This document shows positions 9,998-58,704 of a DNA stretch of 64,000 nt, piece by piece. The DNA lies in IMG/VR virus record IMGVR_UViG_3300031963_000006, positions 62,001-126,000 of that record. The stretch is one strand, 5' to 3'. A program made the position numbers and the translations under genes. The notes below the pieces were generated by a model, which ran no database searches, was not told where the DNA came from, and was given only the letters and a program-made list of their open reading frames with translations. The first letter of the stretch is position 1; every line of letters begins with the position of its first letter.

Positions 9998-10109
9998 ATT
10001 ATATAAGTATTTCAAAAATATAAAAAAGTTTCACTATTACTAAAGATTTGAAACAACATATTTATTATCGTCTATTTCTTAAATAGAAATATTTATAAGA
10101 TAAAATAGA

Positions 10110-12224
10110 TTGATGGAATTCTTAATTAAGAAAAATGCAACTCTCCCACTTTTAAAGTTACAGGTAGTTAAGGACGGTAGAAGTGACTACAATAATTTTA
10201 TGAAACTTATTGAAGTTTCATCAATCTATTTTTCTATGACGGACCTTGAGACGGGAATTCCAAAAATAATGTCTCGTCCTGCAGGTTTTGTTGAAAAAAC
10301 TTTTGATGACCCAAATGCAGAAACTGAGTATTATCTATACTACCAATTCACTTCTACCGACACCAATATGGAAGGTAGGTTTGAGGGCCAGTTCATGCTT
10401 AGAAACTCTGAAGGAGTTTTGATTCTACCAATTAGAGAAAAATTATATATTTCAGTTCAGGAATCATTTATTGCTAATGATTTAAATTATGAAAGTTGTT
10501 ATGTTTCAGAATTTCCATGTTGTATTGAATCACCTATTGAACCTATTTGTCCTCCGTGTCCTACTTTACCTCCTCCATCATCAACACCACAACCTACACC
10601 ATCGGTAACTCCTAATTATTGTAAAATATTTCCATCCGAAGAGCAAGATATATCAATATTTGACGACTCTGAGGCCTCAGTATATCCCGTTACATTTTTA
10701 GTTTATGGTATAACTAATGCCATAGATAGTATAAGTTTAACTTTAAATGGATATAGTCATACTTATGTTGGCGATGTTGGTATGATATTATTATCACCGG
10801 ATGGTTTAAGATATTCTATAATAACAGGGAGGAAAGGGTCTGTTTATGGTATAGATAACGGAACTGTCACGTTAAGCACATTGTCAAATACTTTATGGGA
10901 CGGACACTCAACCGGAAATTTTATAAATGACCCTTATGTTTATGAAACAGTTTTATTTGGTTCCCCATGTCCATATCAGTTTATCCAAGGTCAGTCTACT
11001 TTGGACTTGAGTGTTTTTATAACTGAGACTCCAGCTGAATATGCAAATGGTTTATGGACTTTATATATTCAAGATTTCGCTCCTGAAGACGAAGGTTTTC
11101 TACAGTCAGCGACCTTGACCATATGTGACTCTGGAATTCCAAGAACACCAACACCCACACCGACTCTAACCCGTACCCCAACATTAACTCCTGGGTTGGT
11201 TATAAAAATGAATTTATTTGGATTAATAAGTCCTGGTTCAGTTAATATAGAATATTATTTGGTTATAGATAAGCCATTTTTTGATGATATAATATTAGAA
11301 TTTACTCATGTCTTATTATCGTCAGGTGGTGAAATAGAGATTACATCTCAAATAGAAATAGATAAAGAGAAAACATCAAATGTATTAACATTAACATTAG
11401 ACTATGATTTTGAGTCACTTAGCGGAACCAGTTATTTTAAAAATGTTAATATTATACCTGCCGAATATTCTAACAAATTCATAGTTACTGAGATTGTAGA
11501 ATTCAATTATCCGACACCTACACCGACACCTACCCCAACTCCAACACCTCAATGTAACTTATATTTGGCGACTGATTTTGATTTTGATTATGTTCTTATT
11601 ACTGAGGACTTCCAAAATTTAGTATTAGAAGAAACCTGTAATTTAATTAACATAAACGCAATTTATTATGAAGTTTTAGGTGGCATTTTATTTACGTATA
11701 CCGTAACTTCATCATATCCGGTCGATACCGACGTTGAGGTATCGTTCCAAAACATTATTGGTTATGGATACGAATCTGTACAGTTATTTAATTTGTCACT
11801 TGTGATTTCAGCAGGAACTCAATCGGCTCAAACTTTATTCTACGATTTTACAACTCCATATTCAAGTTATTATGGGGTATCGGCGTTTTACGAGGTTGGA
11901 ACTTCGGTGACGGGATATACTTCATATGGTTACAGTGTTTATACAAATTATAGTTTTGTACCTCCGATTAATAACCCGGTTATCCCTCCTGCTCCGACAG
12001 ACTTAATTCCAACTTCTTTACCTCCAACTCCTACACCGACTAATACTCAAACATCAACTAATACACCAACCCCAAGTGTTACGAATACTAATACTCCAAC
12101 TACTAGTGAAACCCCAACTCCAACCCCTACCCCTACATCAACACCTCCGGTACCACCTTTGACAATAATAGATACATTGACAGACCCTAATGGAGAAAAT
12201 CTAAAAGGTGTTATTGTAATTTAA
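10110..12224 (+). CDS. Virion/fibre-associated protein with Pro/Thr-rich linkers and a proprotein-convertase P-domain-like module
   Basis: Four PT-rich tracts. The segment SHTYVGDVGMILLSPDG...NGLWTLYIQDFAPEDEGFLQSATLTI resembles the P-domain. TTG/ATG start after a TATTTATA motif. Confidence 0.55.
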   Translation: MMEFLIKKNATLPLLKLQVVKDGRSDYNNFMKLIEVSSIYFSMTDLETGIPKIMSRPAGFVEKTFDDPNAETEYYLYYQFTSTDTNMEGRFEGQFMLRNSEGVLILPIREKLYISVQESFIANDLNYESCYVSEFPCCIESPIEPICPPCPTLPPPSSTPQPTPSVTPNYCKIFPSEEQDISIFDDSEASVYPVTFLVYGITNAIDSISLTLNGYSHTYVGDVGMILLSPDGLRYSIITGRKGSVYGIDNGTVTLSTLSNTLWDGHSTGNFINDPYVYETVLFGSPCPYQFIQGQSTLDLSVFITETPAEYANGLWTLYIQDFAPEDEGFLQSATLTICDSGIPRTPTPTPTLTRTPTLTPGLVIKMNLFGLISPGSVNIEYYLVIDKPFFDDIILEFTHVLLSSGGEIEITSQIEIDKEKTSNVLTLTLDYDFESLSGTSYFKNVNIIPAEYSNKFIVTEIVEFNYPTPTPTPTPTPTPQCNLYLATDFDFDYVLITEDFQNLVLEETCNLININAIYYEVLGGILFTYTVTSSYPVDTDVEVSFQNIIGYGYESVQLFNLSLVISAGTQSAQTLFYDFTTPYSSYYGVSAFYEVGTSVTGYTSYGYSVYTNYSFVPPINNPVIPPAPTDLIPTSLPPTPTPTNTQTSTNTPTPSVTNTNTPTTSETPTPTPTPTSTPPVPPLTIIDTLTDPNGENLKGVIVI
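11511..11549 (+). repeat. (Pro-Thr)n coding repeat with a near-tandem 12-nt unit CCGACACCTACA/C
   Basis: ccgacacctacaccgacacctaccccaactccaacacct encodes PTPTPTPTPTPTP. Confidence 0.85.
11961..12158 (+). repeat. Long mucin-like Pro/Thr coding tract
   Basis: Encodes PPINNPVIPPAPTDLIPTSLPPTPTPTNTQTSTNTPTPSVTNTNTPTTSETPTPTPTPTSTPPVPP. Confidence 0.85.
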
Positions 12225-12243
12225 AAAATTAAAAAAAAATAAA

Positions 12244-12261
12244 AGATATTTATAAATAAAA
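12244..12261 (+). promoter_or_regulatory. Conserved upstream element AGATATTTATAAATAAAA (copy 1 of 3 identical); candidate late promoter
   Basis: The same 18-mer occurs at 12244, 30171 and 46213, each just upstream of a start codon. The core TATTTATAAATA is palindromic. Confidence 0.55.
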
Positions 12262-12266
12262 TTAAA

Positions 12267-15200
12267 ATGGCGAATATTAAGATATCTCAATTAGTTTTGG
12301 CAACACCAGGTCCTGAGAGTATTTTTCCTTTCACAGATAATGGTGCTACATATAAAGGATACGTTTCGGGACTAACCACTAACTATATTGAGGTTACTAA
12401 AAATGAACTTGAATCTTTAATTCAAACATCAAGTTTAATTCCTGGTTATTTCTATATAATAAGTGGGGTTGATTTTGACCTATATGGTGGAACAACAATA
12501 ATTTTAGAGTCAGTTTCCCCAAATAAATTATCTGAGAAAGGTGTTGGTTTATTTTATAATCCAAAATATGACCAAACTATCGACGGATATGGAATTTGGA
12601 CGAGACACATGACTCCTACATTCGATAGTATTAGTGGAGGGATATTTACACCAAATGAAACTGTTACATGTGATTTGGGTGGAACTGGAACTTATATATC
12701 TGATGAATTAATAGAATGGGTAAATGGGGATTGGAGTGGTGCGACCTCAATTACTGGAAACACAAGTGGTGTTATTGCAACTATTAGTCGTTCATTGACT
12801 CCTGAATATGTATTTGGTGATGAAAATTCCAGCTCGGCTATATGGGGAGGATTTTTATGGGTAAATCAAGGTGGTGATATTTCTAATGAGTCCGTTGGAA
12901 TTGGTGATGGTTCATCGATATACAGCGGATTTACCGAAAATAGACCAATATTTCCATCAACATTGTCAATAGACACTGGTATAGAACAATTTTTAGATAA
13001 TGGAAGTGGTCAATTAGTCGGAAATGGTGGAGGTACAGGGACCACAAATTATGATACCGGTGAATGGTCTTTAGAGACTACAGGTTCTGTAAGTTCTGGT
13101 TATAGTATAACCGCATCATATATGGCATCGACCGTTGGTGTTTCATTAAATAAGTATGAATTAAGTTCTACGTGGTCTCCCATTCCGTTTAATGATTTTA
13201 ACTATAATTTAGTTGCCGACGAAATAATTTATGATTACGAAAAAGATAAAATAATTTACAGAAGAGATGGATTTGGAAATGAAGTTTCTTGTACGTATCA
13301 AAGTATAAAACAATTTGAAATAGACAATTATGGTAATCCAATTAAGGATTTTCAGTGGGGTAATAATCAAACAAATTGGGGTAATTCTACAGGGTTATTT
13401 TTATTTAATGATGTTCCTGATTTAGGAAGTGATATTTTGTATGGAGGTAACGATTTATTCGATACTGGTAACATTTTAAATACTGAATTATTCACCCAAA
13501 TACCTTACACCCACACTCAAATGGTTGACCCACCTGTTCACAGTAATCAAGAAACTTCTCCATTTTATTTTACTTTAAACGGAATTGTTTTATCTGGCGA
13601 TTCTTATTTCGGGGCAGCGTCAAGTTATTTTACAAATCTTTATCCCGGATTATTTGTTATGATGGCTACAAATACTTCTGTAGATGAGTTTTACATTAAT
13701 GGTTCACTTGGTACAGATTGTGATTCTGTTTTAGATTCTTATCAACAAACCTACACAGGATTCTCTGAAACTTATACCGCGTTTGTTAAAAGATATTTTA
13801 ATAACACAAATAATGAACCATCAAACAACCATATTATAATTGTTAATAGTGATGGTACGGGAATAAATCATGATTATAGTAGCGGAGGATGTGATAGTGA
13901 TTTTGACCAAATATCGGGTTTAACGGCATCTAGTGTAACCAAAATTTATTATTTACTGATGTCATTATCACCCATAGATAAGATAAGTGACAATGAGATT
14001 GATAATATCGTAAGTATTTTTCTATCACTTGTTGATGGGTATTTTATCGAGGAATCTAAATTTAATATAGACACTCAATATACTAATATTACTGGTTTAT
14101 TTAATAATAGTCAAACCACAACTAAATACGGTATAATGGGTAATAAAATAACAGACAGTTATCTTGATTGCTTAAATTTCCAAGGAGGGTTTATTTGGGA
14201 TAATAATTTAACTCAAAGTAGTGTTTTCTCTGAAAACTATTTCGCACCAACTAGAAACTCAAATTTTTCCTACAATAATGTTATCTCAGAAACAATATTT
14301 TCAGATAATATATTTAGTCCTAGGTCTGAATTTCAAAATTGTGAAATATCAAACTCGGTAATAAATAGTAATATACTTGGAGGTTATAACACAAATAATA
14401 CTTATATTGCGGACAGTGAAATATTTTTAAGTGTTGTTTATAACAATCAATTTCACAATACTAATATTAATAAAATAAATTTGAAATTTGGTTCTGAGTT
14501 TTCTAATAATATAACTGACAACTCTAATATTGGTTCAAATAATATAATTACAGATAGTTTGTTAAATGATAATATATTTATTTCAACTAGTATTGAAGGT
14601 AATGAAATCATAGATGATTCATCCATAGAATTTAATAATTTATCAATTTCAAATATTGCATTTAATACAATACATAATTCATCGATATCCAATAACACAT
14701 TAATTAATAATGGAAATATTTTATATAACACATTAAGTCAAATTTCAATTATTGATTATAATTACTTATCGGCAAATACTTTTGTACAAAATAACACTTT
14801 AAGTCAGAATTCATCGATAGAATATAATTCAGGATTCACTAATTCTTATATTGAATATAATAATCTTTCATTAAGTTATTTATCAGGAAACACGTTAGAT
14901 GATAGTTCTTTTATTTCCGAAAACGAGATAACCCAAACATCTGAAATATCAATTAATACTATTTTATCATCATCTTTTATTAGTAATAATATAGTAAAAA
15001 ATCAGTCAAATATAATTGATAATACTCAAAATGGTGGTTCAGAATTAAGATTAAATGACCTAAACAATAGTTTTATTTATAATAATACTCTTAGTGCCAG
15101 TACAATTAATCAAAATTATTTAAATTCATTTTCTGAAATACTATACGGTGTTTTAAATAATTCAACATTTGAAAATAATTTACTAAAATATTCGTCACTT

Positions 15201-15701
15201 GATTTATCGTCAATATGTTTAATGGATAATAAAAATATATCTAAAACAAATTTTGTTGATTCAAATATAAATGATATTTCAGAAAATTCAGTGGTAATTT
15301 ACGACTCTTACTCTAAACAAGTGTTCACAAATTCAACTGGAGGAACTAGGATAAGTTATTATGATGGTACTGATACATTAATCATTGGTAATATAAATGA
15401 TTCGGTGGTACCGACTTTAAATATTACGGGATGGACCGCAGTTAGTTCTTATGATATTGATGTTTACGTTAATATTACATTGGATGGAGGAAATTCAGTA
15501 ACTGAACGAGGGGTGGTATGGGACACTTCTCCATATCCAACTATTTCTAATAATGTTGTTGTAGAAGGGGGAACGGGTATTGGTTCTTACACCACTAACT
15601 TAACCGGACTAACTTCAGGCTCAACAATATACTTCAGAGGATACGCCGTTAACTCAAGTGGAACCGGATACACATGTCAAGATTCATATGATACACCTTA
15701 A
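12267..15701 (+). CDS. Tail fibre/receptor-binding-like protein with Asn-rich beta-repeat region and C-terminal FN3-like module
   Basis: MANIKISQL fibre-type N-terminus; ~400 aa of I.NN.L...S.I.NN repeats; C-terminal DGGNSVTERGVVWDTSPYPT...LTGLTSGSTIYFRGYAVNSSGTGY. Confidence 0.55.
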   Translation: MANIKISQLVLATPGPESIFPFTDNGATYKGYVSGLTTNYIEVTKNELESLIQTSSLIPGYFYIISGVDFDLYGGTTIILESVSPNKLSEKGVGLFYNPKYDQTIDGYGIWTRHMTPTFDSISGGIFTPNETVTCDLGGTGTYISDELIEWVNGDWSGATSITGNTSGVIATISRSLTPEYVFGDENSSSAIWGGFLWVNQGGDISNESVGIGDGSSIYSGFTENRPIFPSTLSIDTGIEQFLDNGSGQLVGNGGGTGTTNYDTGEWSLETTGSVSSGYSITASYMASTVGVSLNKYELSSTWSPIPFNDFNYNLVADEIIYDYEKDKIIYRRDGFGNEVSCTYQSIKQFEIDNYGNPIKDFQWGNNQTNWGNSTGLFLFNDVPDLGSDILYGGNDLFDTGNILNTELFTQIPYTHTQMVDPPVHSNQETSPFYFTLNGIVLSGDSYFGAASSYFTNLYPGLFVMMATNTSVDEFYINGSLGTDCDSVLDSYQQTYTGFSETYTAFVKRYFNNTNNEPSNNHIIIVNSDGTGINHDYSSGGCDSDFDQISGLTASSVTKIYYLLMSLSPIDKISDNEIDNIVSIFLSLVDGYFIEESKFNIDTQYTNITGLFNNSQTTTKYGIMGNKITDSYLDCLNFQGGFIWDNNLTQSSVFSENYFAPTRNSNFSYNNVISETIFSDNIFSPRSEFQNCEISNSVINSNILGGYNTNNTYIADSEIFLSVVYNNQFHNTNINKINLKFGSEFSNNITDNSNIGSNNIITDSLLNDNIFISTSIEGNEIIDDSSIEFNNLSISNIAFNTIHNSSISNNTLINNGNILYNTLSQISIIDYNYLSANTFVQNNTLSQNSSIEYNSGFTNSYIEYNNLSLSYLSGNTLDDSSFISENEITQTSEISINTILSSSFISNNIVKNQSNIIDNTQNGGSELRLNDLNNSFIYNNTLSASTINQNYLNSFSEILYGVLNNSTFENNLLKYSSLDLSSICLMDNKNISKTNFVDSNINDISENSVVIYDSYSKQVFTNSTGGTRISYYDGTDTLIIGNINDSVVPTLNITGWTAVSSYDIDVYVNITLDGGNSVTERGVVWDTSPYPTISNNVVVEGGTGIGSYTTNLTGLTSGSTIYFRGYAVNSSGTGYTCQDSYDTP

Positions 15702-16673: not shown

Positions 16674-16702
16674 TTGATTTAGTGGGTTTTAATATTTATA
16701 AT
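16674..16702 (+). promoter_or_regulatory. Sigma70-like promoter upstream of the DNA polymerase
   Basis: TTGATT (16674-79), 17-nt spacer, TATAAT (16697-702); overlaps a TATTTATA motif. Confidence 0.5.
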
Positions 16703-20979: not shown

Positions 20980-21016
20980 TGATTTGTTTATTATATAAAT
21001 ATTTACTTAAATAGAA

Positions 21017-21796: not shown

Positions 21797-21833
21797 CAAG
21801 ATATTTTATAGATATAAATATCTCATTTTAGAC

Positions 21834-23597: not shown

Positions 23598-23645
23598 AAC
23601 AATCTTTAATGTTATAAAAATAGTAAAAATTAGATATTTATCAAT

Positions 23646-25514: not shown

Positions 25515-25525
25515 AAGATAAAAAA

Positions 25526-25543: not shown

Positions 25544-25635
25544 CAATTTATAAATACTTATCATAAAGTCAAGAATTTTGGTTTTTTCTCAAATATTTAT
25601 CTATAAAAATAAATTAACTAACAAAAAAATTAATA

Positions 25636-29223: not shown

Positions 29224-29233
29224 TCAATAATAT

Positions 29234-29270
29234 AAGACAGGTCGGCAAAAGTCGGCCTGTCTTTATATTT
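29234..29270 (+). terminator. Rho-independent terminator after the sheath gene
   Basis: AAGACAGGTCGGC-AAAA-GTCGGCCTGTCTT (13-bp stem with two G-U pairs) followed by a T-rich tail. Confidence 0.7.
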
Positions 29271-29280
29271 ATTTAATAGT

Positions 29281-30099: not shown

Positions 30100-30170
30100 T
30101 TATTTACTAGTGATTTATAACTAGAAGTTATTTGAAAAAACCCAAAAGTAAATAGAAAAAAATTATTATT

Positions 30171-30188
30171 AGATATTTATAAATAAAA
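30171..30188 (+). promoter_or_regulatory. Conserved upstream element AGATATTTATAAATAAAA (copy 2)
   Basis: Identical 18-mer 28 nt upstream of the tail tube start. Confidence 0.55.
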
Positions 30189-30713: not shown

Positions 30714-30742
30714 TTTACAATATTATATAAATCCCATATTAT
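30714..30742 (+). promoter_or_regulatory. Sigma70-like promoter overlapping the tube terminator
   Basis: TTTACA (30714-19), 17-nt spacer, TATTAT (30737-42). Confidence 0.4.
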
Positions 30743-30761
30743 TAATATGGGATTTTTTTTT
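30729..30761 (+). terminator. Rho-independent terminator after the tail tube gene
   Basis: AAATCCCATATT-ATT-AATATGGGATTT perfect 12-bp stem followed by a T-run. Confidence 0.75.
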
Positions 30762-31798: not shown

Positions 31799-31827
31799 AA
31801 CAAAGTATTTATTTTAAAAGGATAATA

Positions 31828-33657: not shown

Positions 33658-33695
33658 AAAAAACCTTTTATTGTATTTATATATAAAATGTTATA

Positions 33696-46212: not shown

Positions 46213-46230
46213 AGATATTTATAAATAAAA
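46213..46230 (+). promoter_or_regulatory. Conserved upstream element AGATATTTATAAATAAAA (copy 3)
   Basis: Identical 18-mer 4 nt upstream of the 46235 start. Confidence 0.55.
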
Positions 46231-48056: not shown

Positions 48057-48071
48057 TAAAAAATGTTAAAC

Positions 48072-48101: not shown

Positions 48102-48115
48102 AATACCTTAAAAAA

Positions 48116-48340
48116 ATGACAACTCAAGAAAAAATTACGCAAAAATTGTATGAGGCGTTGACAAACAAGTACTCCGCCCAAATTTCAGAAGCTGAAGCAA
48201 CATTAATGGTCTATTTCAATAATCCTGTTGGTATCGGAGAACATCCTCAACATTTGGAAGAGATGGATAAATTTGTTGACCAATTGGCAAGTGCAAAAGA
48301 TAAGCTAGACGCTTTACAACAATTCAAGAAATATAGTTAA
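48116..48340 (+). CDS. Hypothetical helical protein (74 aa)
   Basis: Clean start and stop between the terminator and the recombinase; NPVGIGEHP motif. Confidence 0.75.
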   Translation: MTTQEKITQKLYEALTNKYSAQISEAEATLMVYFNNPVGIGEHPQHLEEMDKFVDQLASAKDKLDALQQFKKYS

Positions 48341-48341
48341 T

Positions 48342-49352: not shown

Positions 49353-49363
49353 TTAAATAAAAG

Positions 49364-50368: not shown

Positions 50369-50374
50369 TTTTTT

Positions 50375-50827
50375 ATGAAAGAGCAAGATTTAACAAAACT
50401 TGAGTTTTTGATGATGGTTAACGATAACATCATCGTTCAGAGGTATTTTAATGTTCGTGATTACAATCCCGAAGCAAAATACTCATCCGAACTTTATGAG
50501 TTTATTTTAGAATTTAAAAATACTCTCATGCATCGTTTGAAGATGAAAACTGTGGATTATATGCTTGAAAATTCTTATGAGATTCAGGGTAACCCATCTA
50601 TTTTGGATACGTCATATACCGACGGACCAGAACACTTTAACATCTTTATTAAACATGGGGACATGACAATTTGTCATCGTCAGATTGATGCTAAGATTTT
50701 CCCTCCTAAAATAAGATACACCGTAGATATCCGCCCTCATATAAAAAGTTTGCTTTCATCACTTACTGACATTTTTTCAGCGAAAAATTTAACTTTTGAA
50801 TTCGCGGGAATTAGTACTAAGCGATAA
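50375..50827 (+). CDS. Hypothetical protein (150 aa)
   Basis: Tightly spaced ORF within the replication operon. Confidence 0.75.
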   Translation: MKEQDLTKLEFLMMVNDNIIVQRYFNVRDYNPEAKYSSELYEFILEFKNTLMHRLKMKTVDYMLENSYEIQGNPSILDTSYTDGPEHFNIFIKHGDMTICHRQIDAKIFPPKIRYTVDIRPHIKSLLSSLTDIFSAKNLTFEFAGISTKR

Positions 50828-50856
50828 TATTTATCAAAAACGAACAAAAATTTACT

Positions 50857-52239
50857 ATGGCGTCAAACAAAAATTTCGATTATTTAGGGTCTTCTTTTCA
50901 AATACAATTATTGAATCAAATCATTATTGATAAAGAGTTCGGAAGGTCCATAATTGACGTTATAGAACAACAATATTTTGAAAATAAGTACTTCAAAATC
51001 ATCTTGCAAATGATTAAGGAGTACTATTCCAAATACGAACACGTACCTACTTTTGATACATTAGAGCAAATAACCAAGTCTGAACTACAACAAGAATTGG
51101 CCTCTAAAATTGTGTTGGACACTATCACAAAAATCAAAGACTCCCCAATTGAAGGCAGTGGTTTTATTCAAGAAAAGGCTCTCAAGTTTTGTAAACAACA
51201 AGAACTACAAAAAGCCATTACTAAAGCTCAAAAAGTTATTGATGGTGGTGAGTTTGAAAGTTATGACAAACTAGAAGAACTAGTTAGAGAAGCTCTACAA
51301 GTTGGAGAACGAGAAGATGGAATGGCCGATGTATTCTCTAATTTGGATGATGTACTTAACGAAGACTATCGTCACCCAATTCCGATGGGAATACCAGGTA
51401 TCGACAGATTGTTAAAAGGAGGTTTGGCAAAAGGAGAATTAGGAGTTATCTTAGCCCCCACGGGAGTAGGTAAATCTACATTCTTAACCAAAATTGCAAA
51501 TCACTCATTTAATTTGGGATACAATGTACTTCAAATATTCTTCGAGGATAACCCAAAAATTATTCAACGTAAACACATCACACTTTGGACAAAAGTCCAT
51601 CCCGATGAGTTATCAACTAAAAAAGATGAGGTGATGGATAAGGTTAGAGAGGTACAAAGTAAGATGGAAAACCGTCTTATTTTAAAGAAACTACCATCAG
51701 ATACTTTAACAATGCTTCAAATCAAAAATCAACTTCGCAAGATGATTGCTGATGGAGTTAAGTTAGATATGGTTGTATTAGACTATATTGACTGTATCGT
51801 TCCTGATAAAAATTTGGGTGATGAATGGAAGAGTGAAGGTTCGGTTATGAGAGGTTTCGAAGCAATGTGTCACGAGTTGAATCTGGTTGGGTGGACGGCA
51901 ACACAGGGTAACAGAAGTTCGATTTCATCAGAGGTCGTAACAACAGACCAAATGGGTGGGTCAATTAAGAAGGCTCAAGTTGGTCACGTTATTATATCTG
52001 TTGCGAAAACATTACAACAAAAAGAGATGAAACTGGCCACAATTGCAATAACCAAATCAAGAATTGGTGACGATGGTATTGTGTTTGAAAATTGTAAGTT
52101 CGATAACGGTATGTTAGAAATCGATACCGAAAGTTCGGTAACGTTCTTAGGACTTGAAGAACAGAAAGAAGAACAACAAAGACAACGAGTAAAAGATTTA
52201 CTCGAAAGAAGAAAACAAAGAGAACAACAAAATAATTAA
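50857..52239 (+). CDS. Replicative DnaB-like helicase (gp41-like)
   Basis: [28 protein letters not shown] and WTATQGNR. Confidence 0.9.
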
Positions 52240-52244
52240 TTAAT

Positions 52245-53192
52245 ATGGAAAAGATTTTAGTAGAGAATCCTAATAGGTTTGTAATATTTCCTATCGAACA
52301 TAACGATATATGGGAATATTATAAAATGCACCAAGCCGCGTTTTGGACGGCTGAAGAGGTTGATTTATCAGGTGATATTCGTGATTGGGAAAACCTTTCA
52401 GAAAATGAACAATACTTTGTTAAAAATGTACTGTCATTCTTTGCAGCATCCGATGGTATTGTAAATGAAAACTTGGCGGAGAATTTCTATAGAGAAGTAC
52501 AATACCCTGAAGCAAAATTCTTTTACGGATTTCAACTTGCAATGGAAAACATTCACAGTCTAATGTACTCACTCTTGATTGATACATATGTGTCAAATCC
52601 AAAAGAAAAAGATGAATGTTTTCATGCGATTGACAGACTTCCAGCGGTTCAAAAGAAAGCAAAATGGGCTCTTGATTGGATTACAAACGCATCATTCCAA
52701 GAAAGACTTGTGGCTTTTGCGGCCGTAGAAGGAATTTTCTTTTCAGGTTCATTCTGTTCAATATTTTGGTTGAAATCAAGAGGACTTATGCAAGGTTTAT
52801 GTAATGCAAATTCGCTCATCTTTAAAGATGAAAATCTTCACTGTGACTTTGCAATTCACCTCTTGAATAATCACTGTGAAAACAAACCAAGTGAAAAGAG
52901 AATTAAAGAGATTTTGTTGTCAGCTCTTGAGATTGAAAAAGAATTTATTACCGAATCACTTCCAGTTTCACTTATCGGAATGAACTCAAATCTTATGAAA
53001 CAATATCTTGAGTTTGTTGTTGATGGTCTACTTGTTAAAATGGGATGTAAGAAACAATTTAATGTTGAACAACCATTTAAATTTATGGAACAAATCGCAG
53101 TTGAAACAAAAGGTAACTTCTTTGAATCAAGAACTGTTGAGTACCAAAAAGCAAAGTTGAACGAAACATTGTCCTTTACGGACGACTTTTAA
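52245..53192 (+). CDS. nrdB: Ribonucleotide reductase class Ia beta subunit
   Basis: [21 protein letters not shown] (iron ligands and radical Tyr), [10 protein letters not shown] and DENLH. Confidence 0.95.
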
Positions 53193-53211
53193 TTGATTAT
53201 CTTTTAAAACT

Positions 53212-55644
53212 ATGATGTCTTTAAAAATTAAAAAAAGAAGTGGGGAGGACTCGTCCTTTAACCCACAGAAAATATATAACCGAATTAAAAGAGCGGCAAA
53301 AGGTTTGAACGTAAATTCGGACGAAATCTTTATTAAAGTAATCACTTCGGTACCAACCGAAGGTGAGATTATGACCAAAGATTTGGATAAATTAATTTAT
53401 GAAATAGCCGCCGCTTATACTGGTAGTCACCACGATTATTCTAGACTCGCATCGTCTGTTGCAATTTCATCTTATCACAAAGAAACAAACCCAAGTTTCT
53501 CAAACACTATGATGGAACTTTACAAAGAAAGAATTGTTAATGATGAGTTTATCAATATGATTAGCAGTTACGGTCCGTCAAATATTGATGAGGTTATCAA
53601 TCACGACAATGACTATAATTTTGATTACTTTGCTTGGAGGTCATTACAAGAGATGTATCTTTTGAAACTACCAAGTGGTAAGACAATCGAGCGTCCACAA
53701 CATATGTATATGCGTGTTGCAATATGGGTAACTAAATCATTTGAACAAGCGGTCGAATACTATAAGTCACTATCAAGTCAGCTTATTTCACCGGCAACAC
53801 CAATTATGATTAATGCCGGTACAAAAATTCCACAACTCGCCTCTTGTGTTCTTCACTATAATGATGCGGACTCTAGAGAAGGTCTTTTGAACACGATGAA
53901 AGATATTTCAACATATTCATCAGACGCTGCGGGTATTGGTTTATCTATGTCAAATATCCGAAGCAAAGAAAGTAGAATTTCATCATCAGGTGGATTTGCG
54001 GGAGGACTTTTAAAGTATTTAAAAATTGTTAATGAATCACTTCGTTTCTTTAACCAACAAGGACGTAGACCTGGTTCCGCAGCAATTTATTTGGAACCTT
54101 GGCATAAAGATATTTTTGACCTTTTAGATATTAAAAAGAATACGGGAGCTGAAGAATTGAGAGCACGTGATTTGTTTACCGCACTTTGGATTCCTGATAA
54201 CTTTATGAAAGCTGTTAAGAACAATGGTGATTGGTATTTGTTCTGTCCTAACGATATTAAGAAAGCGGGTGTTAAACCCCTCCAAGAATGTTATGGTGAT
54301 GAATATGAAGAAAACTATAACAAAGCAGTTGAATTAGGTCTTGGTAAAAAAGTTAAAGCCCAAGAAATTTGGTCAAAGATTATTGAGTCACAGATTGAAA
54401 CTGGTGTACCATATCTCTGCTCAAAGGATAACGCAAACAAAAAGACAAACCACCAAAACATCGGTGTAATCAAACAGTCAAATCTTTGTAATGAAATTTA
54501 TCAATACACAGATGAAAACACAACTGCGATTTGTACACTATCATCAATGGTATTAAAGAACTTCATTAAAGAAGGAACATTTGACCATCAGTTGTTGTAC
54601 GAGGAAACTCGTAAAGTTGTAAGGGCTCTTAACAAAGTTGTGGATATTAACAACTACTCAACTGAAAAGGGAAACAAGGGTGGTCGTGAACAAAGAGCAA
54701 TTGCCATTGGAACACAGGGTCTTGCTGATGTATTCTATTTGATGGATTATATCTTTACATCTGATGAAGCGAAGAAACTAAATAAAGAAATATTTGAAAC
54801 AATTTATTTTGCGGCAATTACTGAAAGTTGTCGTTTATGTAAGTCAGAAGAATATAAACCATATGATTTCTTTAACGGCTCACCGATGTCAGAAGGAGTG
54901 TTCCAATTTGATATGTGGGGACTCAATGAAGGTGATTTATCAGGAAGATGGGATTGGAAATTACTTAAAGAAGAAGTTAAAGATTATGGTGTTTGCAATT
55001 CTTTATTCACCGCTCAAATGCCTGTTGCGTCATCTGCTAAAATTACAGGCTCATATGAGATGACAGAACCCGCTCACTCGGCAATCTTTAACAGACGTGT
55101 TGTTGGTGGTGAAATTATGATTGTTAACAAATACTTGATTAATGATTTTGAGAAGCTCGGTATTTGGGGAGAAGACCTGAAGAATGAAATTATTCTTAAT
55201 GAAGGTTCAGTTCAGGGGATTAATTTCAATAACTACCTTGACCCTGAGGACAAACAGTACAATAAGAAAGTTAAAAGAATTGAGCACCTTATTCCAAAGT
55301 ATAAAACAATTTGGGAAATCTCACAGAAGGAATTGATTGAAATGGCGGCCGACAGAGCTCCGTTTATTGACCAATCACAGTCGATGAATATCTATATGGG
55401 TAACCCAACTCTATCTAAGATTTCATCATCACACTTCTATGGTTGGGAAAAGGGGCTAAAAACACTTTGTTATTATGTTAGAACAAAGGCAATTTCAACA
55501 GGGGCAAAACACTTGGCGGTTGACATATCAAAAATGTCAAAACCAAATGTTACACCTGAACCACCAAAAGTTGATTATAGTAACATGAATTTACCACCAA
55601 AACCAGCTAATTCTGAGTTTGAATGTTTTGGTTGTTCATCATAA
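53212..55644 (+). CDS. nrdA: Ribonucleotide reductase class Ia alpha subunit with ATP cone
   Basis: N-terminal ATP cone; LASC, SNLCNE and CTLSS catalytic cysteines; C-terminal CFGC. Confidence 0.95.
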   Translation: MMSLKIKKRSGEDSSFNPQKIYNRIKRAAKGLNVNSDEIFIKVITSVPTEGEIMTKDLDKLIYEIAAAYTGSHHDYSRLASSVAISSYHKETNPSFSNTMMELYKERIVNDEFINMISSYGPSNIDEVINHDNDYNFDYFAWRSLQEMYLLKLPSGKTIERPQHMYMRVAIWVTKSFEQAVEYYKSLSSQLISPATPIMINAGTKIPQLASCVLHYNDADSREGLLNTMKDISTYSSDAAGIGLSMSNIRSKESRISSSGGFAGGLLKYLKIVNESLRFFNQQGRRPGSAAIYLEPWHKDIFDLLDIKKNTGAEELRARDLFTALWIPDNFMKAVKNNGDWYLFCPNDIKKAGVKPLQECYGDEYEENYNKAVELGLGKKVKAQEIWSKIIESQIETGVPYLCSKDNANKKTNHQNIGVIKQSNLCNEIYQYTDENTTAICTLSSMVLKNFIKEGTFDHQLLYEETRKVVRALNKVVDINNYSTEKGNKGGREQRAIAIGTQGLADVFYLMDYIFTSDEAKKLNKEIFETIYFAAITESCRLCKSEEYKPYDFFNGSPMSEGVFQFDMWGLNEGDLSGRWDWKLLKEEVKDYGVCNSLFTAQMPVASSAKITGSYEMTEPAHSAIFNRRVVGGEIMIVNKYLINDFEKLGIWGEDLKNEIILNEGSVQGINFNNYLDPEDKQYNKKVKRIEHLIPKYKTIWEISQKELIEMAADRAPFIDQSQSMNIYMGNPTLSKISSSHFYGWEKGLKTLCYYVRTKAISTGAKHLAVDISKMSKPNVTPEPPKVDYSNMNLPPKPANSEFECFGCSS

Positions 55645-55647: not shown

Positions 55648-55672
55648 AAATCCCGAGTAATCGGGATTTTTT
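55648..55672 (+). terminator. Rho-independent terminator after nrdA
   Basis: AAATCCCGA-GTAA-TCGGGATTT with a GNRA loop and a T-run. Confidence 0.85.
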
Positions 55673-55691
55673 ATTTAAGATATTTATTAAT

Positions 55692-56315
55692 ATGGCGGTA
55701 TATAATGAAAATATCGAATTATTTAAATGTTTAGTTAGGGTATCACATTTTACAAAAAATCCTAACGATGATAATAAATTCCACAAGGCTTATGCTTTTG
55801 CCATTCAATCAGTTGCTGGAAAAATATTAACATTCCATGTAATGACGGATTATGGAATGATGAGGTCAAGAGTTCCAATTTCTGAAATATTCATGAAAGA
55901 ACCGACTAACGACATACCGTTTCACTTTAAACAATTATGGGATTGTTTTTCTGAAAACGTAACTGTAACAACTTATGATTATTTATATGAAAAAAGGTGT
56001 CAGGTTGTTTTAAGAGATGGGTCAAAAATTTGGGCAACATATCTTATGACGGTTGATTGGTACAGAAATCCATATTCTGATGAACCTTCAGATTATAAGT
56101 GCGGGCACATTTTAATTGGTGATGACGGTTATCTTTTGTGCCAACCCAATAATAGAATTTATTGGAAGGATTCAAATTGGGTTACAAACAAATTCCCAAT
56201 AGAACCAAAAGAGATTAAAGTTGACACTGATTTACCTTCAGTCGAAACTTTATCCGATAGATGGGTTGCAGAAGATGGGGATTGTTATTATTATAATATA
56301 AAATCGACCGAATAA
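55692..56315 (+). CDS. Hypothetical phage protein (207 aa)
   Basis: Well-formed ORF after a TATTTATT motif; QLWDCF and QPNNRI segments; no function recognised. Confidence 0.75.
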   Translation: MAVYNENIELFKCLVRVSHFTKNPNDDNKFHKAYAFAIQSVAGKILTFHVMTDYGMMRSRVPISEIFMKEPTNDIPFHFKQLWDCFSENVTVTTYDYLYEKRCQVVLRDGSKIWATYLMTVDWYRNPYSDEPSDYKCGHILIGDDGYLLCQPNNRIYWKDSNWVTNKFPIEPKEIKVDTDLPSVETLSDRWVAEDGDCYYYNIKSTE

Positions 56316-56339
56316 TATTTATTATAAAATATACACACA

Positions 56340-56786
56340 ATGACATACGGTATAAATTTTCCATTCAGAGATTCTTTCAACGGAACTTATTTTGATTTAT
56401 CATCAACCAATGATGAAGAGATAAGAACTGATTTGGTTCATTTATTATTAACAAGAAAAGGAACTAGATACTTTTTACCTGATTTTGGAACAAGATTGTA
56501 TGAATATTTATTCGAACCATTAGATGGTCCTACTTTTTCCGATATCGAAGCTGAGATTAGGGATACTGTGTCAGAATATATACCCGGTATTACAATAACT
56601 AAAATAGATATAAAACCAGCTTCAAGTGATGACGAGGATAAAGGTTCATATGTTAACGACAATGATGAAAGAGTTTTCAGAGTCCCTGGAATTGGTACTT
56701 TGGAACATACTGCTAAAATAAAAATTGATTATAAAATTAATAACGATGTTTTTAATTCTAGCGATTTCGTTATTATTAATATTTAA
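56340..56786 (+). CDS. Baseplate wedge subunit (gp25-like)
   Basis: LLLTRKGTRYFLPDFGTRLYEYLFEP...IRDTVSEYIP. Confidence 0.9.
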   Translation: MTYGINFPFRDSFNGTYFDLSSTNDEEIRTDLVHLLLTRKGTRYFLPDFGTRLYEYLFEPLDGPTFSDIEAEIRDTVSEYIPGITITKIDIKPASSDDEDKGSYVNDNDERVFRVPGIGTLEHTAKIKIDYKINNDVFNSSDFVIINI

Positions 56787-56791
56787 AAGTT

Positions 56792-58630
56792 ATGGCGAAT
56801 AAAAAAATATCGTATACTACAAGAGATTTTCAGTCGATTAGGACTGAGTTAATAAATTTCACACAAACATATTATCCTGATTTAGTAAGTAACTTTAATG
56901 ATGCTTCGGTTTTTTCTGCTTTATTAGATTTAAACGCGGCGGTTTCAGACAACCTACAGTTCAATATTGACAGAAGTATACAAGAAACAGTACTTCAATA
57001 CGCTCAACAAAGGTCATCAATTTACAATATCGCCCGAACTTATGGATTAAAAATTCCAGGTCAGAGACCATCTGTTGCATTAGTTGACTTTTCGATTACA
57101 GTACCGGCTTTTGGAGATAAGGAAGATTTGAGATATTGTGGTATTTTAAGAAGAGGAGCTCAAGTTAACGGAGGAGGACAAGTTTTTGAAACCGTATACG
57201 ATATTGACTTTTCATCACCAATTAGTGGTGATGGGTTTCCTAATAGATTAAAGATTCCTGTATTTGATTCAAATAACAAGTTAATTAATTATACAATAGT
57301 AAAAAGAGAAACGGTTGTTAATGGAGTTACTAAAGTGTTTAAAAAAGTTGTAACACCAAATGATGTTAAACCATTTTTTGAATTGTTTTTACCTGAAAAA
57401 AATGTACTAGGGGTTACTAGTGTTATACTTAAAGATGGAACTCAATATGCTAACATACCTTCGGCTCAAGAATTTTTAAACAATGACATCAGATGGTATG
57501 AGGTTAAGGCCTTAATTGAGGATAGAGTTTTTGTAGAAGACCCAACTAAAACTTCGGACAGACCAGGTATCAAGGTTGGGAAATATGTGGTAACTAATAA
57601 CAAATTTATAACTGAATATACACCTGAAGGGTTTTTAAAAATGACTTTCGGTGGAGGTAGTCAATCTGCGGACGAACAATTAAGAGAATTCGCTCGAAAT
57701 GGTTACAAATTAGACCTATACAAATACTCGAATAATTTTGCATTAGGTAGTACCTTAAAGGCTAATACGACTATGTTTGTTCAATATAGAATTGGAGGTG
57801 GGTCTACAAGTAATTTAGGGGTGAATGTTATAACACAAATAGGTACGGTTTCATTCTTTGTTAATGGTCCTTCAGAATCTGTAAATAATAATGTTGTAAA
57901 TTCATTAAGATGTATAAATGTTACTGCGGCAATAGGAGGAGCGCCGGCTCCGACCACTGAAGAGGTAAGAAATTATGTTTCATTTAATTTTGCGGCACAA
58001 AACAGGGCTGTTACAGTTAATGACTATGAGTCTATAATAAGAACCATGCCGTCACAATATGGAGCACCGGCAAAAGTGTCAATAACTGAAGAAAATAATA
58101 AGATAAAAATTAAAATGTTATCTTATGATGATTCGGGTAAATTAACTGAGATAATATCAAACACTTTGAAAAGTAATGTTGCTAATTATTTGTCAAACTA
58201 CAGAATGATTAATGATTATATTTCAGTTGAGACGGCAAATGTGATTGATTTATCGTTAACTATAGATGTTGTGTTAGATTCAACTCAAAACCAAGGAGTT
58301 GTAATTTCTTCTATTATAAATTTAGTTTCAGATTATTTTGACCCTGCTAATATGCAGATGGGACAAAATGTTAATGTATCAGAAATACGTAGACTAATCC
58401 AAAGTGAAAATGGGGTATTGTCGATATCTGATATTTTGGTATTTAATAGAATTGGAGGTCAATATTCATCGTCACAAACGTCTCAGAGATACTTAGATTC
58501 GGACACAAAACAGATTGAATTGGTGGATGACACAATATTTGCGGAACCAAATCAAATTTACCAAATTAGATTCCCCGGTAAAGATATTAATATCAGAGTT
58601 AAGAACCTTTCTACGGTTAATTTTTCTTGA
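56792..58630 (+). CDS. Baseplate wedge subunit (gp6/baseplate J-like)
   Basis: RDFQSIR, AQQRSSIYNIARTYG, YRIGGG...N, A.GGAPA and QNRAVTVNDY. Confidence 0.85.
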   Translation: MANKKISYTTRDFQSIRTELINFTQTYYPDLVSNFNDASVFSALLDLNAAVSDNLQFNIDRSIQETVLQYAQQRSSIYNIARTYGLKIPGQRPSVALVDFSITVPAFGDKEDLRYCGILRRGAQVNGGGQVFETVYDIDFSSPISGDGFPNRLKIPVFDSNNKLINYTIVKRETVVNGVTKVFKKVVTPNDVKPFFELFLPEKNVLGVTSVILKDGTQYANIPSAQEFLNNDIRWYEVKALIEDRVFVEDPTKTSDRPGIKVGKYVVTNNKFITEYTPEGFLKMTFGGGSQSADEQLREFARNGYKLDLYKYSNNFALGSTLKANTTMFVQYRIGGGSTSNLGVNVITQIGTVSFFVNGPSESVNNNVVNSLRCINVTAAIGGAPAPTTEEVRNYVSFNFAAQNRAVTVNDYESIIRTMPSQYGAPAKVSITEENNKIKIKMLSYDDSGKLTEIISNTLKSNVANYLSNYRMINDYISVETANVIDLSLTIDVVLDSTQNQGVVISSIINLVSDYFDPANMQMGQNVNVSEIRRLIQSENGVLSISDILVFNRIGGQYSSSQTSQRYLDSDTKQIELVDDTIFAEPNQIYQIRFPGKDINIRVKNLSTVNFS

Positions 58631-58704
58631 TAATTTATTTATCTAAATAATGGTCTATCTTTTTTTGAAAATAGCAAATAAACTATTTATAAAAAAGGTT
58701 TTTC

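What the first reader, a model, noticed from the sequence alone, without database searches (positions are those of the whole stretch)
10090..58691. Recurrent sense-strand TATTTAT element upstream of most structural genes, including three identical 18-mers
Seen: TATTTAT(A/C/T) lies 3-55 nt upstream of starts on the coding strand at 10090, 12247, 16693, 23635, 25594, 29266, 30174, 31806, 33674, 46216, 50828, 55681, 56316 and 58684. On the minus strand it appears as TATAAATA at 20994, 21813 and 25549. AGATATTTATAAATAAAA is identical at 12244, 30171 and 46213, with a palindromic core. Known: the T4 late promoter is TATAAATA. Inference: this is a phage-specific late promoter whose consensus is the reverse complement of T4's, implying a distinct phage sigma factor. 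The AT-rich background inflates chance hits, but the strand and position bias is strong.
Basis: partly seen in the sequence, partly recalled or inferred. Interest (0 to 1): 0.6.

Follow-up and report, generated by a model that had tools for sequence, protein, structure and literature searches.

The report
Late-gene promoter motif of lake jumbo phage
The 8-base word ATATTTAT sits just upstream of about 70 genes, mostly virion, packaging and lysis genes, in a 321-kb freshwater phage of Bacteroidota and in its distant relatives, and it is most likely the phage's own late promoter, read by host RNA polymerase carrying a phage-encoded sigma factor.

Summary
The 7-mer is not enriched in the window as a whole (43 copies vs 49.8 expected). 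Its placement is extreme: 15 of 40 window genes carry it in sense within 60 nt upstream (shuffles 1.8).

The core is ATATTTAT. Across the 321-kb phage genome it is the top upstream 8-mer (70 genes vs 4.1 expected). In co-directional spacers it is 45 sense vs 3 antisense.

It has promoter anatomy:
- no -35 element
- an A 5-6 nt downstream
- start-codon spacing peaks at 4-5 nt (leaderless) and 13-17 nt
- it often abuts an intrinsic terminator

It is invariant upstream of the tail-tube gene in 64 diverged relatives. It is enriched again in a 288-kb genome sharing about 40% protein identity, and ortholog placement is conserved (p=3e-7) for sheath, tube, baseplate, terminase, capsid-region and lysin genes.

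A second class, TTTG-N19-TAnnTTTG (Bacteroidota host type), precedes auxiliary genes.

The phage encodes no RNA polymerase found here. It encodes two sigma-like proteins, one with a gp55-like sigma-2 domain.

The 'late promoter plus phage sigma' reading is therefore largely supported. 'Reverse complement of T4' is only formal, since in the same orientation the two match at 6 of 8 positions. No transcription start site data exist.

The clade is the published bS21 phages, and that paper does not mention promoters.

The parts
10058..10065 (+). ATATTTAT, distal copy 44 nt upstream of the TTG start at 10110
10089..10096 (+). ATATTTAT, 13 nt upstream of the 704-aa gene 10110-12224 (P-domain-like, no phage family hit)
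12246..12253 (+). ATATTTAT inside the identical 18-mer (12244-12261), 13 nt upstream of the 1144-aa gene 12267-15701
16692..16699 (+). ATATTTAT, 55 nt upstream of the DNA polymerase gene 16755-19562. This placement is not conserved in the distant relative G002.
20995..21002 (-). ATATTTAT on the minus strand, 15 nt upstream of gene 19858-20979 (head-tail adaptor-like). Conserved in G002.
21814..21821 (-). ATATTTAT on the minus strand, 14 nt upstream of gene 21017-21799
23634..23641 (+). ATATTTAT, 4 nt upstream of the ATG at 23646 (leaderless geometry). Conserved in G002.
25593..25600 (+). ATATTTAT, 35 nt upstream of the tail sheath gene 25636-29223. Conserved in G002.
29234..29263 (+). Intrinsic terminator (13-bp stem, 7 G-C pairs) after the sheath gene. 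Its T-tail runs into the next promoter motif.
29265..29272 (+). ATATTTAT, 8 nt upstream of gene 29281-30099, directly after the terminator
30146..30165 (+). Conserved AAAGTAAATAGAAAAA + T-tract box, 8-27 nt upstream of the tail-tube motif. It is specific to this promoter and its role is unknown.
30173..30180 (+). ATATTTAT inside the identical 18-mer (30171-30188), 36 nt upstream of the tail tube gene 30217-30705. It is 97-100% conserved in 64 distinct relatives while the flanks vary.
30729..30755 (+). Terminator-like hairpin plus T-run after the tail tube gene
31805..31812 (+). GTATTTAT variant, 15 nt upstream of gene 31828-33657
33673..33680 (+). GTATTTAT variant, 15 nt upstream of the 1684-aa gene 33696-38750
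46215..46222 (+). ATATTTAT inside the identical 18-mer (46213-46230), 12 nt upstream of the small ORF 46235-46459
50827..50834 (+). ATATTTAT, 22 nt upstream of the DnaB-like helicase gene 50857-52239. It overlaps the stop of the preceding gene and is not conserved in G002.
55648..55669 (+). Terminator hairpin (9-bp stem) plus T-run after the RNR large-subunit gene, 10 nt before the next motif
55680..55687 (+). ATATTTAT, 4 nt upstream of the ATG at 55692 (leaderless geometry; ferredoxin-like gene)
56315..56322 (+). ATATTTAT, 17 nt upstream of the baseplate wedge (gp25-like) gene 56340-56786. Conserved in G002.
58683..58690 (+). CTATTTAT variant, 14 nt upstream of the >1765-aa gene starting at 58705
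25549..25556 (-). No minus-strand gene lies downstream and it is followed at once by the bidirectional terminator 25525-25544. It probably does not act as a gene promoter.

Best explanation
ATATTTAT is the single -10-like core of a phage-specific promoter class. The fuller consensus is (A/G)ATATTTAT-AAATAAAA.

Proposed mechanism:
- The host (Bacteroidota) RNA polymerase core carries a phage-encoded sigma factor, binds this element without any -35 contact, and starts at an A 5-6 nt downstream. The motif would then lie at about -13 to -6.
- The products are either leaderless mRNAs (start codon 4-5 nt after the motif) or mRNAs with 8-12-nt A-rich leaders. Both suit the Shine-Dalgarno-less translation of this phylum.
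- The class drives virion, packaging and lysis genes as short units bounded by intrinsic terminators, so it is the late class.
- Auxiliary and early genes use host-type TTTG-N19-TAnnTTTG promoters.

The likeliest reader is the 249-aa two-domain sigma at G000:12159-12908 (minus strand, outside the window). Its N-terminal domain resembles sigma region 2 and T4 gp55.

Status of each step:
- Shown: enrichment, strand and position bias, conservation, gene-class association, and the presence and fold of the sigma candidates.
- Inferred: that the element is a promoter, the TSS position, the late timing, and which sigma reads it.
For: Enrichment and orientation:
- Top upstream 8-mer: 70 genes vs 4.1 expected.
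- 45 sense vs 3 antisense in co-directional spacers; shuffles 4.1 +/- 2.1.

Promoter anatomy:
- No conserved -35.
- A at the 6th base after the motif in 51 of 69 sites.
- Distance to the start codon peaks at 4-5 nt (20 sites) and 13-17 nt.
- Motifs directly follow terminators: strict hairpin plus T-run upstream of 8 of 69 sites vs 0 of 236 controls. The 29234-29263 terminator abuts the 29265 motif.

Conservation:
- Tail-tube promoter in 64 distinct relatives: motif 97-100% conserved, flanks 36-69%, distance to the ATG varies from 31 to 50 nt in all but one sequence (83 nt there).
- Pooled loci from other, more distant sigma-bearing contigs: 49 sense vs 3 antisense.
- G002, a complete 288-kb genome sharing 89 of 337 proteins at a mean 40% identity: 52 upstream genes vs 6.3 expected, with the same spacing mode.
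- Ortholog placement is conserved. Of 89 ortholog pairs, 12 carry the motif in both genomes, 7 only in G000, 4 only in G002 and 66 in neither; Fisher p=2.7e-7. The conserved set is sheath, tube, adaptor, gp25-like wedge, large terminase, capsid-region genes and an endolysin-like gene.

Separate host-type class:
- TTTG-N18-21-TAnnTTTG: 9 sense vs 1 antisense in G000 and 46 vs 2 in G002.
- It sits on DnaJ, an HTH regulator, RNA ligase, a phosphoesterase, a peptidase and cREC genes.

Machinery:
- No multisubunit RNAP domains were found.
- One canonical sigma-70-family gene and one divergent sigma were found.
- The divergent sigma's profile hits SigA region 2 (E=0.006) and T4 gp55 (E=0.35).
- Its AF2 model (pLDDT 91.6) matches gp55 chain 7d7c_F at Z=10.8 (117 aa, rmsd 5.1), and the top 50 hits listed are sigma factors or sigma-containing RNAP complexes.
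- Its sigma-2-like domain is predicted to dock on the clamp-helix region (residues 271-319) of Flavobacterium johnsoniae beta-prime. Score 0.64 vs best control 0.00; that mark was reached by 51 of 78 solved complexes and 2 of 108 mismatched pairs. Run agreement was at least 94% and partner pLDDT at least 74. This may reflect likeness to solved sigma complexes.

Literature:
- T4 late promoters are likewise a lone -10-like element with no -35 conservation (PMC7892883).
- In this phage clade the structural region is reported as highly expressed and not transcribed as one operon (PMC9723584).
Against: - No transcription start sites or time course exist. The lake metatranscriptome contigs covered only coding parts and cannot show RNA ends.
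- In G000 the motif also precedes the DNA polymerase, DnaB and many small genes of unknown function at 196-223 kb, so 'late' may really be 'middle plus late'.
- Both sigma genes are conserved in every relative examined, and relatives carry up to three further sigma genes. Co-occurrence therefore cannot assign the motif to one sigma.
- The gp55 link is weak by sequence (phrog_234 E=0.009 and 5e-4). The protein is longer than gp55 and has a sigma-4-like C-terminal half, yet no -35 is seen.
- The T4 clamp (gp45) families were not found.
- Gene calls are my own longest-ORF calls, so some spacings may be off.
- Depletion of the motif inside genes is clear in G000 but weak in G002.
Confidence: 0.7

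Rival explanations
1. The element is a phage promoter, but it is read by the canonical phage sigma-70-family protein (G000:162826-163626; regions 1.2, 2 and 4) or by another factor. The gp55-like protein then serves a different promoter set.
For: - The canonical sigma has strong Pfam and PHROG matches.
- It lies just downstream of a Rad50/gp46-like gene, roughly where gene 55 lies in T4. That synteny point rests on my own knowledge of the T4 map and.
- It is conserved with the motif in G002 (46.6% identity) and in all five relatives searched.
Against: - A sigma with an intact region 4 would be expected to impose a -35 or -33 element, and none is seen at ATATTTAT sites.
- A candidate TTGACA-N17-TAnnnT class that might have been its own target was not statistically supported, so this sigma has no assigned motif either way.
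Confidence: 0.2
2. ATATTTAT is a degenerate form of the host Bacteroidota -7 box (TAnnTTTG). It is used by unmodified host sigma-A holoenzyme, so no phage sigma is required.
For: - With the preceding base included, the word reads nATATTTA, which matches TAnnTTT at 4 of the box's 6 specified positions (5 where a T precedes the word).
- The geometry relative to leaderless start codons is the same (4-5 nt) as for the genuine host-type boxes in this genome.
Against: - The G of the host box is replaced by an invariant A.
- The leading T is present in only a third of sites, and the -33 TTTG is absent.
- The two words mark different gene sets, and both are kept apart in a genome only 40% identical at protein level.
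- Strict invariance of 8 bases is unlike a degenerate host site.
Confidence: 0.07
3. The word acts at the RNA level. It would be either a translation-initiation or ribosome-selection signal (for example for ribosomes carrying the phage bS21) or an endoribonuclease processing site upstream of late cistrons.
For: - It is sense-strand only and close to start codons.
- The phage encodes bS21, which has been proposed to favour late phage mRNAs (PMC9723584).
- The 4-5-nt spacing class resembles ribosome-binding-site spacing.
Against: - Spacing to the start codon ranges from 4 to 55 nt, and at the tail-tube gene from 31 to 50 nt in all but one relative (83 nt there), while the word stays invariant.
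- Many copies lie immediately after intrinsic terminators, where a new transcript must begin.
- A conserved A lies 5-6 nt downstream, as expected of a start site.
Confidence: 0.03

Closest known systems
Bacteriophage T4 late promoters (TATAAATA) read by gp55 with gp33 and the gp45 clamp
   Same: - A single 8-bp AT-only -10-like element with no -35 conservation, upstream of virion genes.
- 6 of 8 bases identical in the same orientation.
- The phage is a distant T4-like myovirus, judged by sheath, tube and baseplate families.
- It encodes a protein whose sigma-2 domain matches gp55 structurally (Z=10.8).
   Different: - The consensus is ATATTTAT, with the central AA replaced by TT and the register shifted one base.
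- The candidate sigma is 249 aa with an extra sigma-4-like C-terminal half, not the 185-aa gp55 architecture.
- gp45-type clamp families were not detected, and gp33 was not sought.
- Many transcripts would be leaderless.
- The host is Bacteroidota.
Bacteroidota housekeeping promoters (-33 TTTG / -7 TAnnTTTG)
   Same: - An AT-rich box at about the same distance from the start site and from leaderless start codons.
- Genuine examples occur in the same genome and in G002.
   Different: - The late-type word lacks the conserved G and the -33 TTTG.
- It marks a different gene set.
Phage sigma cascades such as Bacillus phage SPO1 gp28 and gp33/34 (from my own knowledge)
   Same: Phage-encoded sigma-70-family proteins replace the host sigma to switch host RNAP to class-specific phage promoters. 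The genome here carries more than one sigma gene.
   Different: - SPO1 promoters have both -35 and -10 elements.
- The consensus sequences are unrelated.
- No timing data exist here.
bS21-encoding freshwater phages of Bacteroidetes (Chen et al. 2022, PMC9723584)
   Same: - The genome fits the description: up to about 331 kb, from lake water.
- bS21 lies on the reverse strand between the terminase-portal and capsid genes.
- The structural region is reported as not transcribed as one operon.
   Different: That paper's main text contains none of the words promoter, sigma or motif. The promoter classes and sigma candidates described here are additional.

Membership tests
T4-type late promoter (gp55-dependent) | Lone -10-like 8-bp element with no conserved -35 | tested here: met
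   Position profiles of 69-75 sites in G000 and 55 in G002 show no upstream element beyond a weak T-tract. The T4 property is taken from PMC7892883.
T4-type late promoter (gp55-dependent) | Consensus TATAAATA | tested here: not met
   The invariant word is ATATTTAT. TATAAATA in sense is only marginally enriched in co-directional spacers (10 sense vs 44 antisense; shuffle mean 4.1, max 10). Several of those sense copies probably belong to the composite ATATTTATAAATA, of which 5 sense copies exist genome-wide, but this overlap was not checked site by site.
T4-type late promoter (gp55-dependent) | Upstream of late (virion, packaging, lysis) genes | tested here: met
   Sheath, tube, adaptor, baseplate wedge, large terminase, portal (G variant) and endolysin-like genes carry it, and the placement is conserved in G002. 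Timing itself was not measured.
T4-type late promoter (gp55-dependent) | gp55 homologue encoded by the phage | tested here: inconclusive
   phrog_234 E=0.009 and 5e-4. Profile vs gp55 E=0.35. Structure Z=10.8 to 7d7c_F, tied with other sigma-2 domains. The protein has an extra C-terminal domain.
T4-type late promoter (gp55-dependent) | Sliding-clamp (gp45) and gp33 co-activation | tested here: not met
   PF09116 and PF02916 gave no match in the genome. gp33 was not searched. Divergent clamps cannot be excluded.
T4-type late promoter (gp55-dependent) | Transcription starts about 6 nt downstream of the element, late in infection | not testable with these tools
   Only assembled metatranscriptome contigs were available. 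The geometry is inferred from the conserved A and the leaderless spacing.
Bacteroidota sigma-A promoter | -7 box TAnnTTTG with a conserved G | tested here: not met
   An invariant A occupies the G position, and the leading T is present in about one third of sites.
Bacteroidota sigma-A promoter | -33 TTTG about 19-20 nt upstream | tested here: not met
   It is absent at ATATTTAT sites. It is present at the separate TAnnTTTG class, strongly in G002.
Sigma-70 family (for the 249-aa protein P0001) | Region-2 domain that binds the beta-prime clamp helices | tested here: met
   Profile hit to SigA region 2, E=0.006. Z=9-10 at rmsd 2.7-3.0 A to isolated sigma-2 domains. Predicted docking on F. johnsoniae beta-prime 271-319: score 0.64 vs best control 0.00, a mark reached by 51 of 78 solved complexes and 2 of 108 mismatches, with run agreement at least 94% and partner pLDDT at least 74. 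This is a prediction only.
Sigma-70 family (for the 249-aa protein P0001) | Region-4 helix-turn-helix | tested here: inconclusive
   The C-terminal half aligns to sigma-4 of ECF and other sigmas only within whole-chain alignments of high rmsd. There is no Pfam hit. The domain was not folded alone.

The most novel reading that the evidence does not exclude
ATATTTAT and the 249-aa gp55-like two-domain sigma form a previously undescribed promoter/sigma pair. The sigma family has over 1,100 clusters at 50% identity and about 8,000 close relatives in metagenomes. The pair would be shared by a large, uncultivated radiation of Bacteroidota jumbo phages. It would produce leaderless or very short-leader late mRNAs, and their selective translation could be coupled to the phage-encoded ribosomal protein bS21.
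Probability: 0.3. Interest if true: 0.65.

Novelty: new member of a known kind. Interest (0 to 1): 0.45.

Why it matters
This phage clade is abundant in lakes: at least 600 contigs carry a tail-tube protein of which the 80 retrieved are 82% or more identical, and thousands of sigma homologues exist. Its regulation has not been described.

A defined late promoter word, a separate host-type early class and two candidate sigmas give three things:
- a direct way to annotate transcription units and temporal classes in uncultured Bacteroidota jumbo phages
- an extra host-phylum signal, from the TTTG/TAnnTTTG class
- concrete parts (promoter plus sigma) that can be tested in Flavobacterium systems

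The leaderless geometry also offers a testable link to the published idea that phage bS21 biases late translation.

Tried and rejected
- Megablast of 20 kb against isolated phages gave no match. tblastn of the sigma found only a weak hit in Microcystis phage Mel-JY01, so no cultured close relative exists in that collection.
- A single-sequence PDB search with the sigma candidate gave nothing meaningful. A 71-sequence profile was needed.
- Lake metatranscriptomes X1-X4 were laid on window 25401-31400 (6,000 letters). Short low-depth contigs fell inside the sheath and tube coding regions only, with none over the promoters. This gives no information on RNA ends, strand or level.
- A third, E. coli-like TTGACA-N16-18-TAnnnT class was considered after seeing examples such as window 47149. 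Counts were 7 sense vs 4 antisense in G000 and 3 vs 1 in G002, so it is not supported. The generic sigma-70 scan is also below shuffle expectation.
- T4 clamp families PF09116 and PF02916, and RNAP families PF00562 and PF00623, gave no hits.
- Look-ups of two distant sigma homologues returned only 1.5-kb contigs. A viral-contig scan with P0169 served instead.
- Co-occurrence of motif and sigma genes cannot discriminate, because all five relatives carry both kinds of sigma.
- Literature searches for the word itself with phage and promoter gave no paper. TATTTATA with 'late promoter' gave only unrelated viruses plus the T4 structure paper.

Full report
**Context**

The window is G000:C1:62133-126132 of a single 321,403-bp virus record with direct terminal repeats, rated complete, about 32.7% G+C. 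It is a distant T4-like myovirus.

Genes identified in the window:
- tail sheath (25636-29223), tail tube (30217-30705) and baseplate hub-like (30901-31656)
- gp25-like and gp6-like baseplate wedge (56340-58630)
- head-tail adaptor-like (19858-20979, minus strand)
- DNA polymerase (16755-19562) and a helicase (21834-23654, minus strand)
- SSB, UvsX-like recombinase, exonuclease, DnaB and ribonucleotide reductase (47205-55644)
- several giant ORFs with no family hit

The genome carries ribosomal protein bS21 on the reverse strand between the terminase-portal genes and the capsid-region genes. That is the hallmark of the bS21 phages of freshwater Bacteroidetes described by Chen et al. 2022 (PMC9723584). 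The main text of that paper contains none of the words promoter, sigma or motif.

**Observation**

A fourth copy lies at G000:167787.

The 7-mer is not enriched in the window as a whole (43 vs 49.8 expected). The signal lies in where it sits:
- 15 of 40 window genes carry it in sense within 60 nt upstream, against 1.8 in shuffled upstream windows (max 7). 4 carry it antisense.
- The 8-mer ATATTTAT is upstream of 12 of 40 genes, against 0.84 in shuffles, with 0 antisense.

Genome-wide, on my own greedy ORF calls (337 genes):
- ATATTTAT is the most over-represented upstream 8-mer: 70 genes vs 4.1 expected.
- 80 of its 125 copies lie in the 8.2% of the genome that is intergenic. 69 of those point at a start codon within 100 nt.
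- In spacers between co-directional genes it is 45 sense vs 3 antisense. Dinucleotide shuffles give 4.1 +/- 2.1, max 10.
- The first base is A in most sites, with G, C or T variants.

One listed site (25550, minus strand) has no gene to serve and runs into a terminator.

**Anatomy**

Aligned on the word, the 69 sites show no -35-like element and only a weak T-tract 13-15 nt upstream. There is an A at the sixth base after the word in 51 of 69 sites.

The distance from the word to the start codon is bimodal:
- 4-5 nt (20 sites). Here the A of the ATG sits exactly where that conserved A lies, so the mRNAs would be leaderless.
- 13-17 nt, which gives leaders of about 8-12 nt.
- A tail extends to 55 nt and beyond.

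Many sites follow a G+C hairpin plus T-run directly. A strict perfect-stem search finds 8 of 69, against 0 of 236 motif-less gene upstreams.

In the window, the strongest terminator (29234-29263) ends two bases before the motif at 29265. Another hairpin lies at 55648-55669, ten bases before the motif at 55680. Sheath and tube thus look like short promoter-gene-terminator units. This fits the published remark that the structural region is not transcribed as one operon.

The identical 18-mers are simply the full consensus. In the distant relative G002 the majority rule is ATATTTAT-AAATAAA. This composite contains an exact T4-type TATAAATA five bases in. The leaderless sites lack that part, however, and only the first eight bases are invariant.

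**Conservation**

The tail-tube protein finds at least 600 related viral contigs. In 64 distinct upstream sequences the word is 97-100% conserved, while the adjoining nine bases are 36-69% conserved. The distance to the ATG varies from 31 to 50 nt in all but one sequence, where it is 83 nt. That variation argues against a fixed-distance translational signal.

In loci from other, more distant phages found through a distant homologue of the sigma candidate (38% identical to ours), ATATTTAT is again the most strand-biased spacer 8-mer, at 49 sense vs 3 antisense.

I fetched one such complete genome, G002 (287,855 bp). Only 89 of the 337 G000 proteins have a hit there, at a mean 40% identity. ATATTTAT is upstream of 52 genes (6.3 expected), with 46 sense vs 8 antisense in spacers and the same 12-16-nt spacing mode.

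Among the 89 ortholog pairs, 12 carry the word in both genomes, 7 only in G000, 4 only in G002 and 66 in neither (Fisher p=2.7e-7).
- The conserved set is sheath, tube, adaptor-like, the 171-aa gene at window 23646, gp25-like wedge, large terminase, two capsid-region genes, an endolysin-like gene and a few genes of unknown function.
- The copies at the DNA polymerase and DnaB are not conserved.

Inside genes the word is depleted against codon-shuffled controls in G000 (22 vs 42.8 sense, 15 vs 39.6 antisense). In G002 the depletion is weak.

**A second promoter class**

The same genomes hold textbook Bacteroidota promoters, TTTG-N18-21-TAnnTTTG.
- Counts are 9 sense vs 1 antisense in G000 spacers and 46 vs 2 in G002.
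- A sharp -33 ATTTGG appears in the G002 profile.
- In G000 they lie outside the window, mainly at 171-192 kb and 225-285 kb.
- They precede DnaJ, DUF932, an HTH regulator, an RNA ligase, a phosphoesterase, a metallopeptidase-like protein and a cREC receiver protein.
- Some are also leaderless, with 4 nt to the ATG.

This class supports a Bacteroidota host, in line with PMC9723584. It also shows that ATATTTAT is a separate specificity: it lacks both the G and the -33.

**Who reads it**

No multisubunit RNAP domains were found, so host RNAP is the likely enzyme. Two sigma-like genes exist, both outside the window.
- A 266-aa canonical sigma-70-family protein at G000:162826-163626, with regions 1.2, 2 and 4.
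- A 249-aa protein at G000:12159-12908 (minus strand). It has no Pfam hit and a weak match to the PHROG 'late sigma transcription factor' family (E=0.009 and 5e-4).

Because the family scans left the second protein open, I ran the large protein searches. It has about 8,000 close relatives and 1,144 cluster representatives at 50% identity. Sources mostly call these relatives hypothetical proteins; some call them SprT-like proteases, a name nothing here supports.

Evidence on the 249-aa protein:
- A 71-sequence profile (A1) hits SigA region 2 (E=0.006-0.014) and T4 gp55 (E=0.35).
- The AlphaFold model (pLDDT 91.6) matches almost only sigma factors in Foldseek, but at weak E-values.
- With VIA-align, residues 26-149 match gp55 chain 7d7c_F at Z=10.8 (117 residues, rmsd 5.1). 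They match isolated sigma-2 domains at Z=9-10 (rmsd 2.7-3.0).
- The C-terminal half is aligned to sigma-4 only within whole-chain alignments.
- Its sigma-2-like domain is predicted to sit on the clamp-helix segment (271-319) of Flavobacterium johnsoniae beta-prime. The score is 0.64 against a best control of 0.00. That mark was reached by 51 of 78 solved complexes and 2 of 108 mismatched pairs. Runs agreed in at least 94% of contacts and partner pLDDT was at least 74. The pass may reflect likeness to solved sigma complexes and does not show binding.

The assignment is still an inference. Both sigmas are conserved in all relatives examined, and the T4 clamp families were not found.

**Verdict**

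The interpretation as a phage-specific late promoter implying a phage sigma is largely supported by enrichment, geometry, terminator context, deep conservation, gene-class association and the presence of sigma candidates.

The 'reverse complement of T4' framing has no mechanistic content. In the same orientation the word differs from TATAAATA at two central positions.

This is a new member of a known kind: a class-specific phage promoter read through sigma replacement. It belongs to a published but transcriptionally uncharacterised phage clade. TSS mapping and in vitro transcription are the decisive missing tests.

Noticed in passing
G000:171-192 kb and 225-285 kb (outside the window); G002 genome-wide: Canonical Bacteroidota promoters TTTG-N18-21-TAnnTTTG precede auxiliary or early-type genes. 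Counts are 9 sense vs 1 antisense in G000 and 46 vs 2 in G002. Several are leaderless. This is a sequence-only indicator of host phylum.
   Followed up: yes
G000:299538-299729 (minus strand; locus L143): A ribosomal protein bS21 gene lies on the reverse strand between the portal gene and the capsid-region genes. This identifies the genome as one of the published bS21 phages of freshwater Bacteroidetes. The gene has a TATATTTG box 44 nt upstream rather than ATATTTAT, although the paper reports it as expressed with the late genes.
   Followed up: partly
window 30146-30165: A second conserved box, AAAGTAAATAGAAAAA followed by a T-tract, lies 8-27 nt upstream of the tail-tube ATATTTAT. One A in it is 97% conserved across 64 relatives. 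The only other loose match, on the minus strand at G000:169566, is not next to an ATATTTAT, so no other promoter of the genome has the box. It may be an UP-like element or a regulator site.
   Followed up: partly
G000:196-223 kb (e.g. 201169, 203212, 204208, 209341, 211256, 213056, 217136, 219053): An array of small and mid-size genes, many opening with similar N-termini (MK..ITESQ-like). Each has its own terminator, an ATATTTAT and a start codon 4-5 nt later. They look like a paralogous family of leaderless, individually transcribed genes of unknown function.
   Followed up: no
window 33696-38750, 39070-46206, 58705-64000: Three giant ORFs (1684 aa, 2378 aa and at least 1765 aa; the last is 1843 aa in the full genome) have no PHROG or Pfam family. 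The first has a weak OmpA-like stretch at residues 893-945, below the Pfam cut-off. They are presumably virion or tail-fibre-like proteins.
   Followed up: partly
G002 (loci L128-L142): A further repeated word, about GTATTGTCTAATTAAA, lies upstream of about 20 genes in the distant relative and was not seen in G000. It may be a clade-specific regulatory site or a third promoter class.
   Followed up: no
G001-G005 (records behind L105, L108, L110, L117, L118): Related phage records (127-360 kb, some incomplete) each carry one to three canonical sigma-70-family genes in addition to the 250-aa gp55-like one. This is an unusually rich set of phage sigma factors.
   Followed up: partly
window 25401-31400: Lake-water metatranscriptome runs (X1-X4, one study) hold near-identical fragments of the sheath and tube coding regions (X1 holds 34% of sampled words). 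The phage, or a very close strain, is therefore present in RNA libraries from a lake. Expression is not shown by contigs alone.
   Followed up: partly
window 47149-47177: An E. coli-like TTGACA-N17-TATTAT lies 27 nt upstream of the SSB gene, with about ten similar sites elsewhere in the genome. The class as a whole is not statistically supported (7 sense vs 4 antisense in G000; 3 vs 1 in G002).
   Followed up: yes
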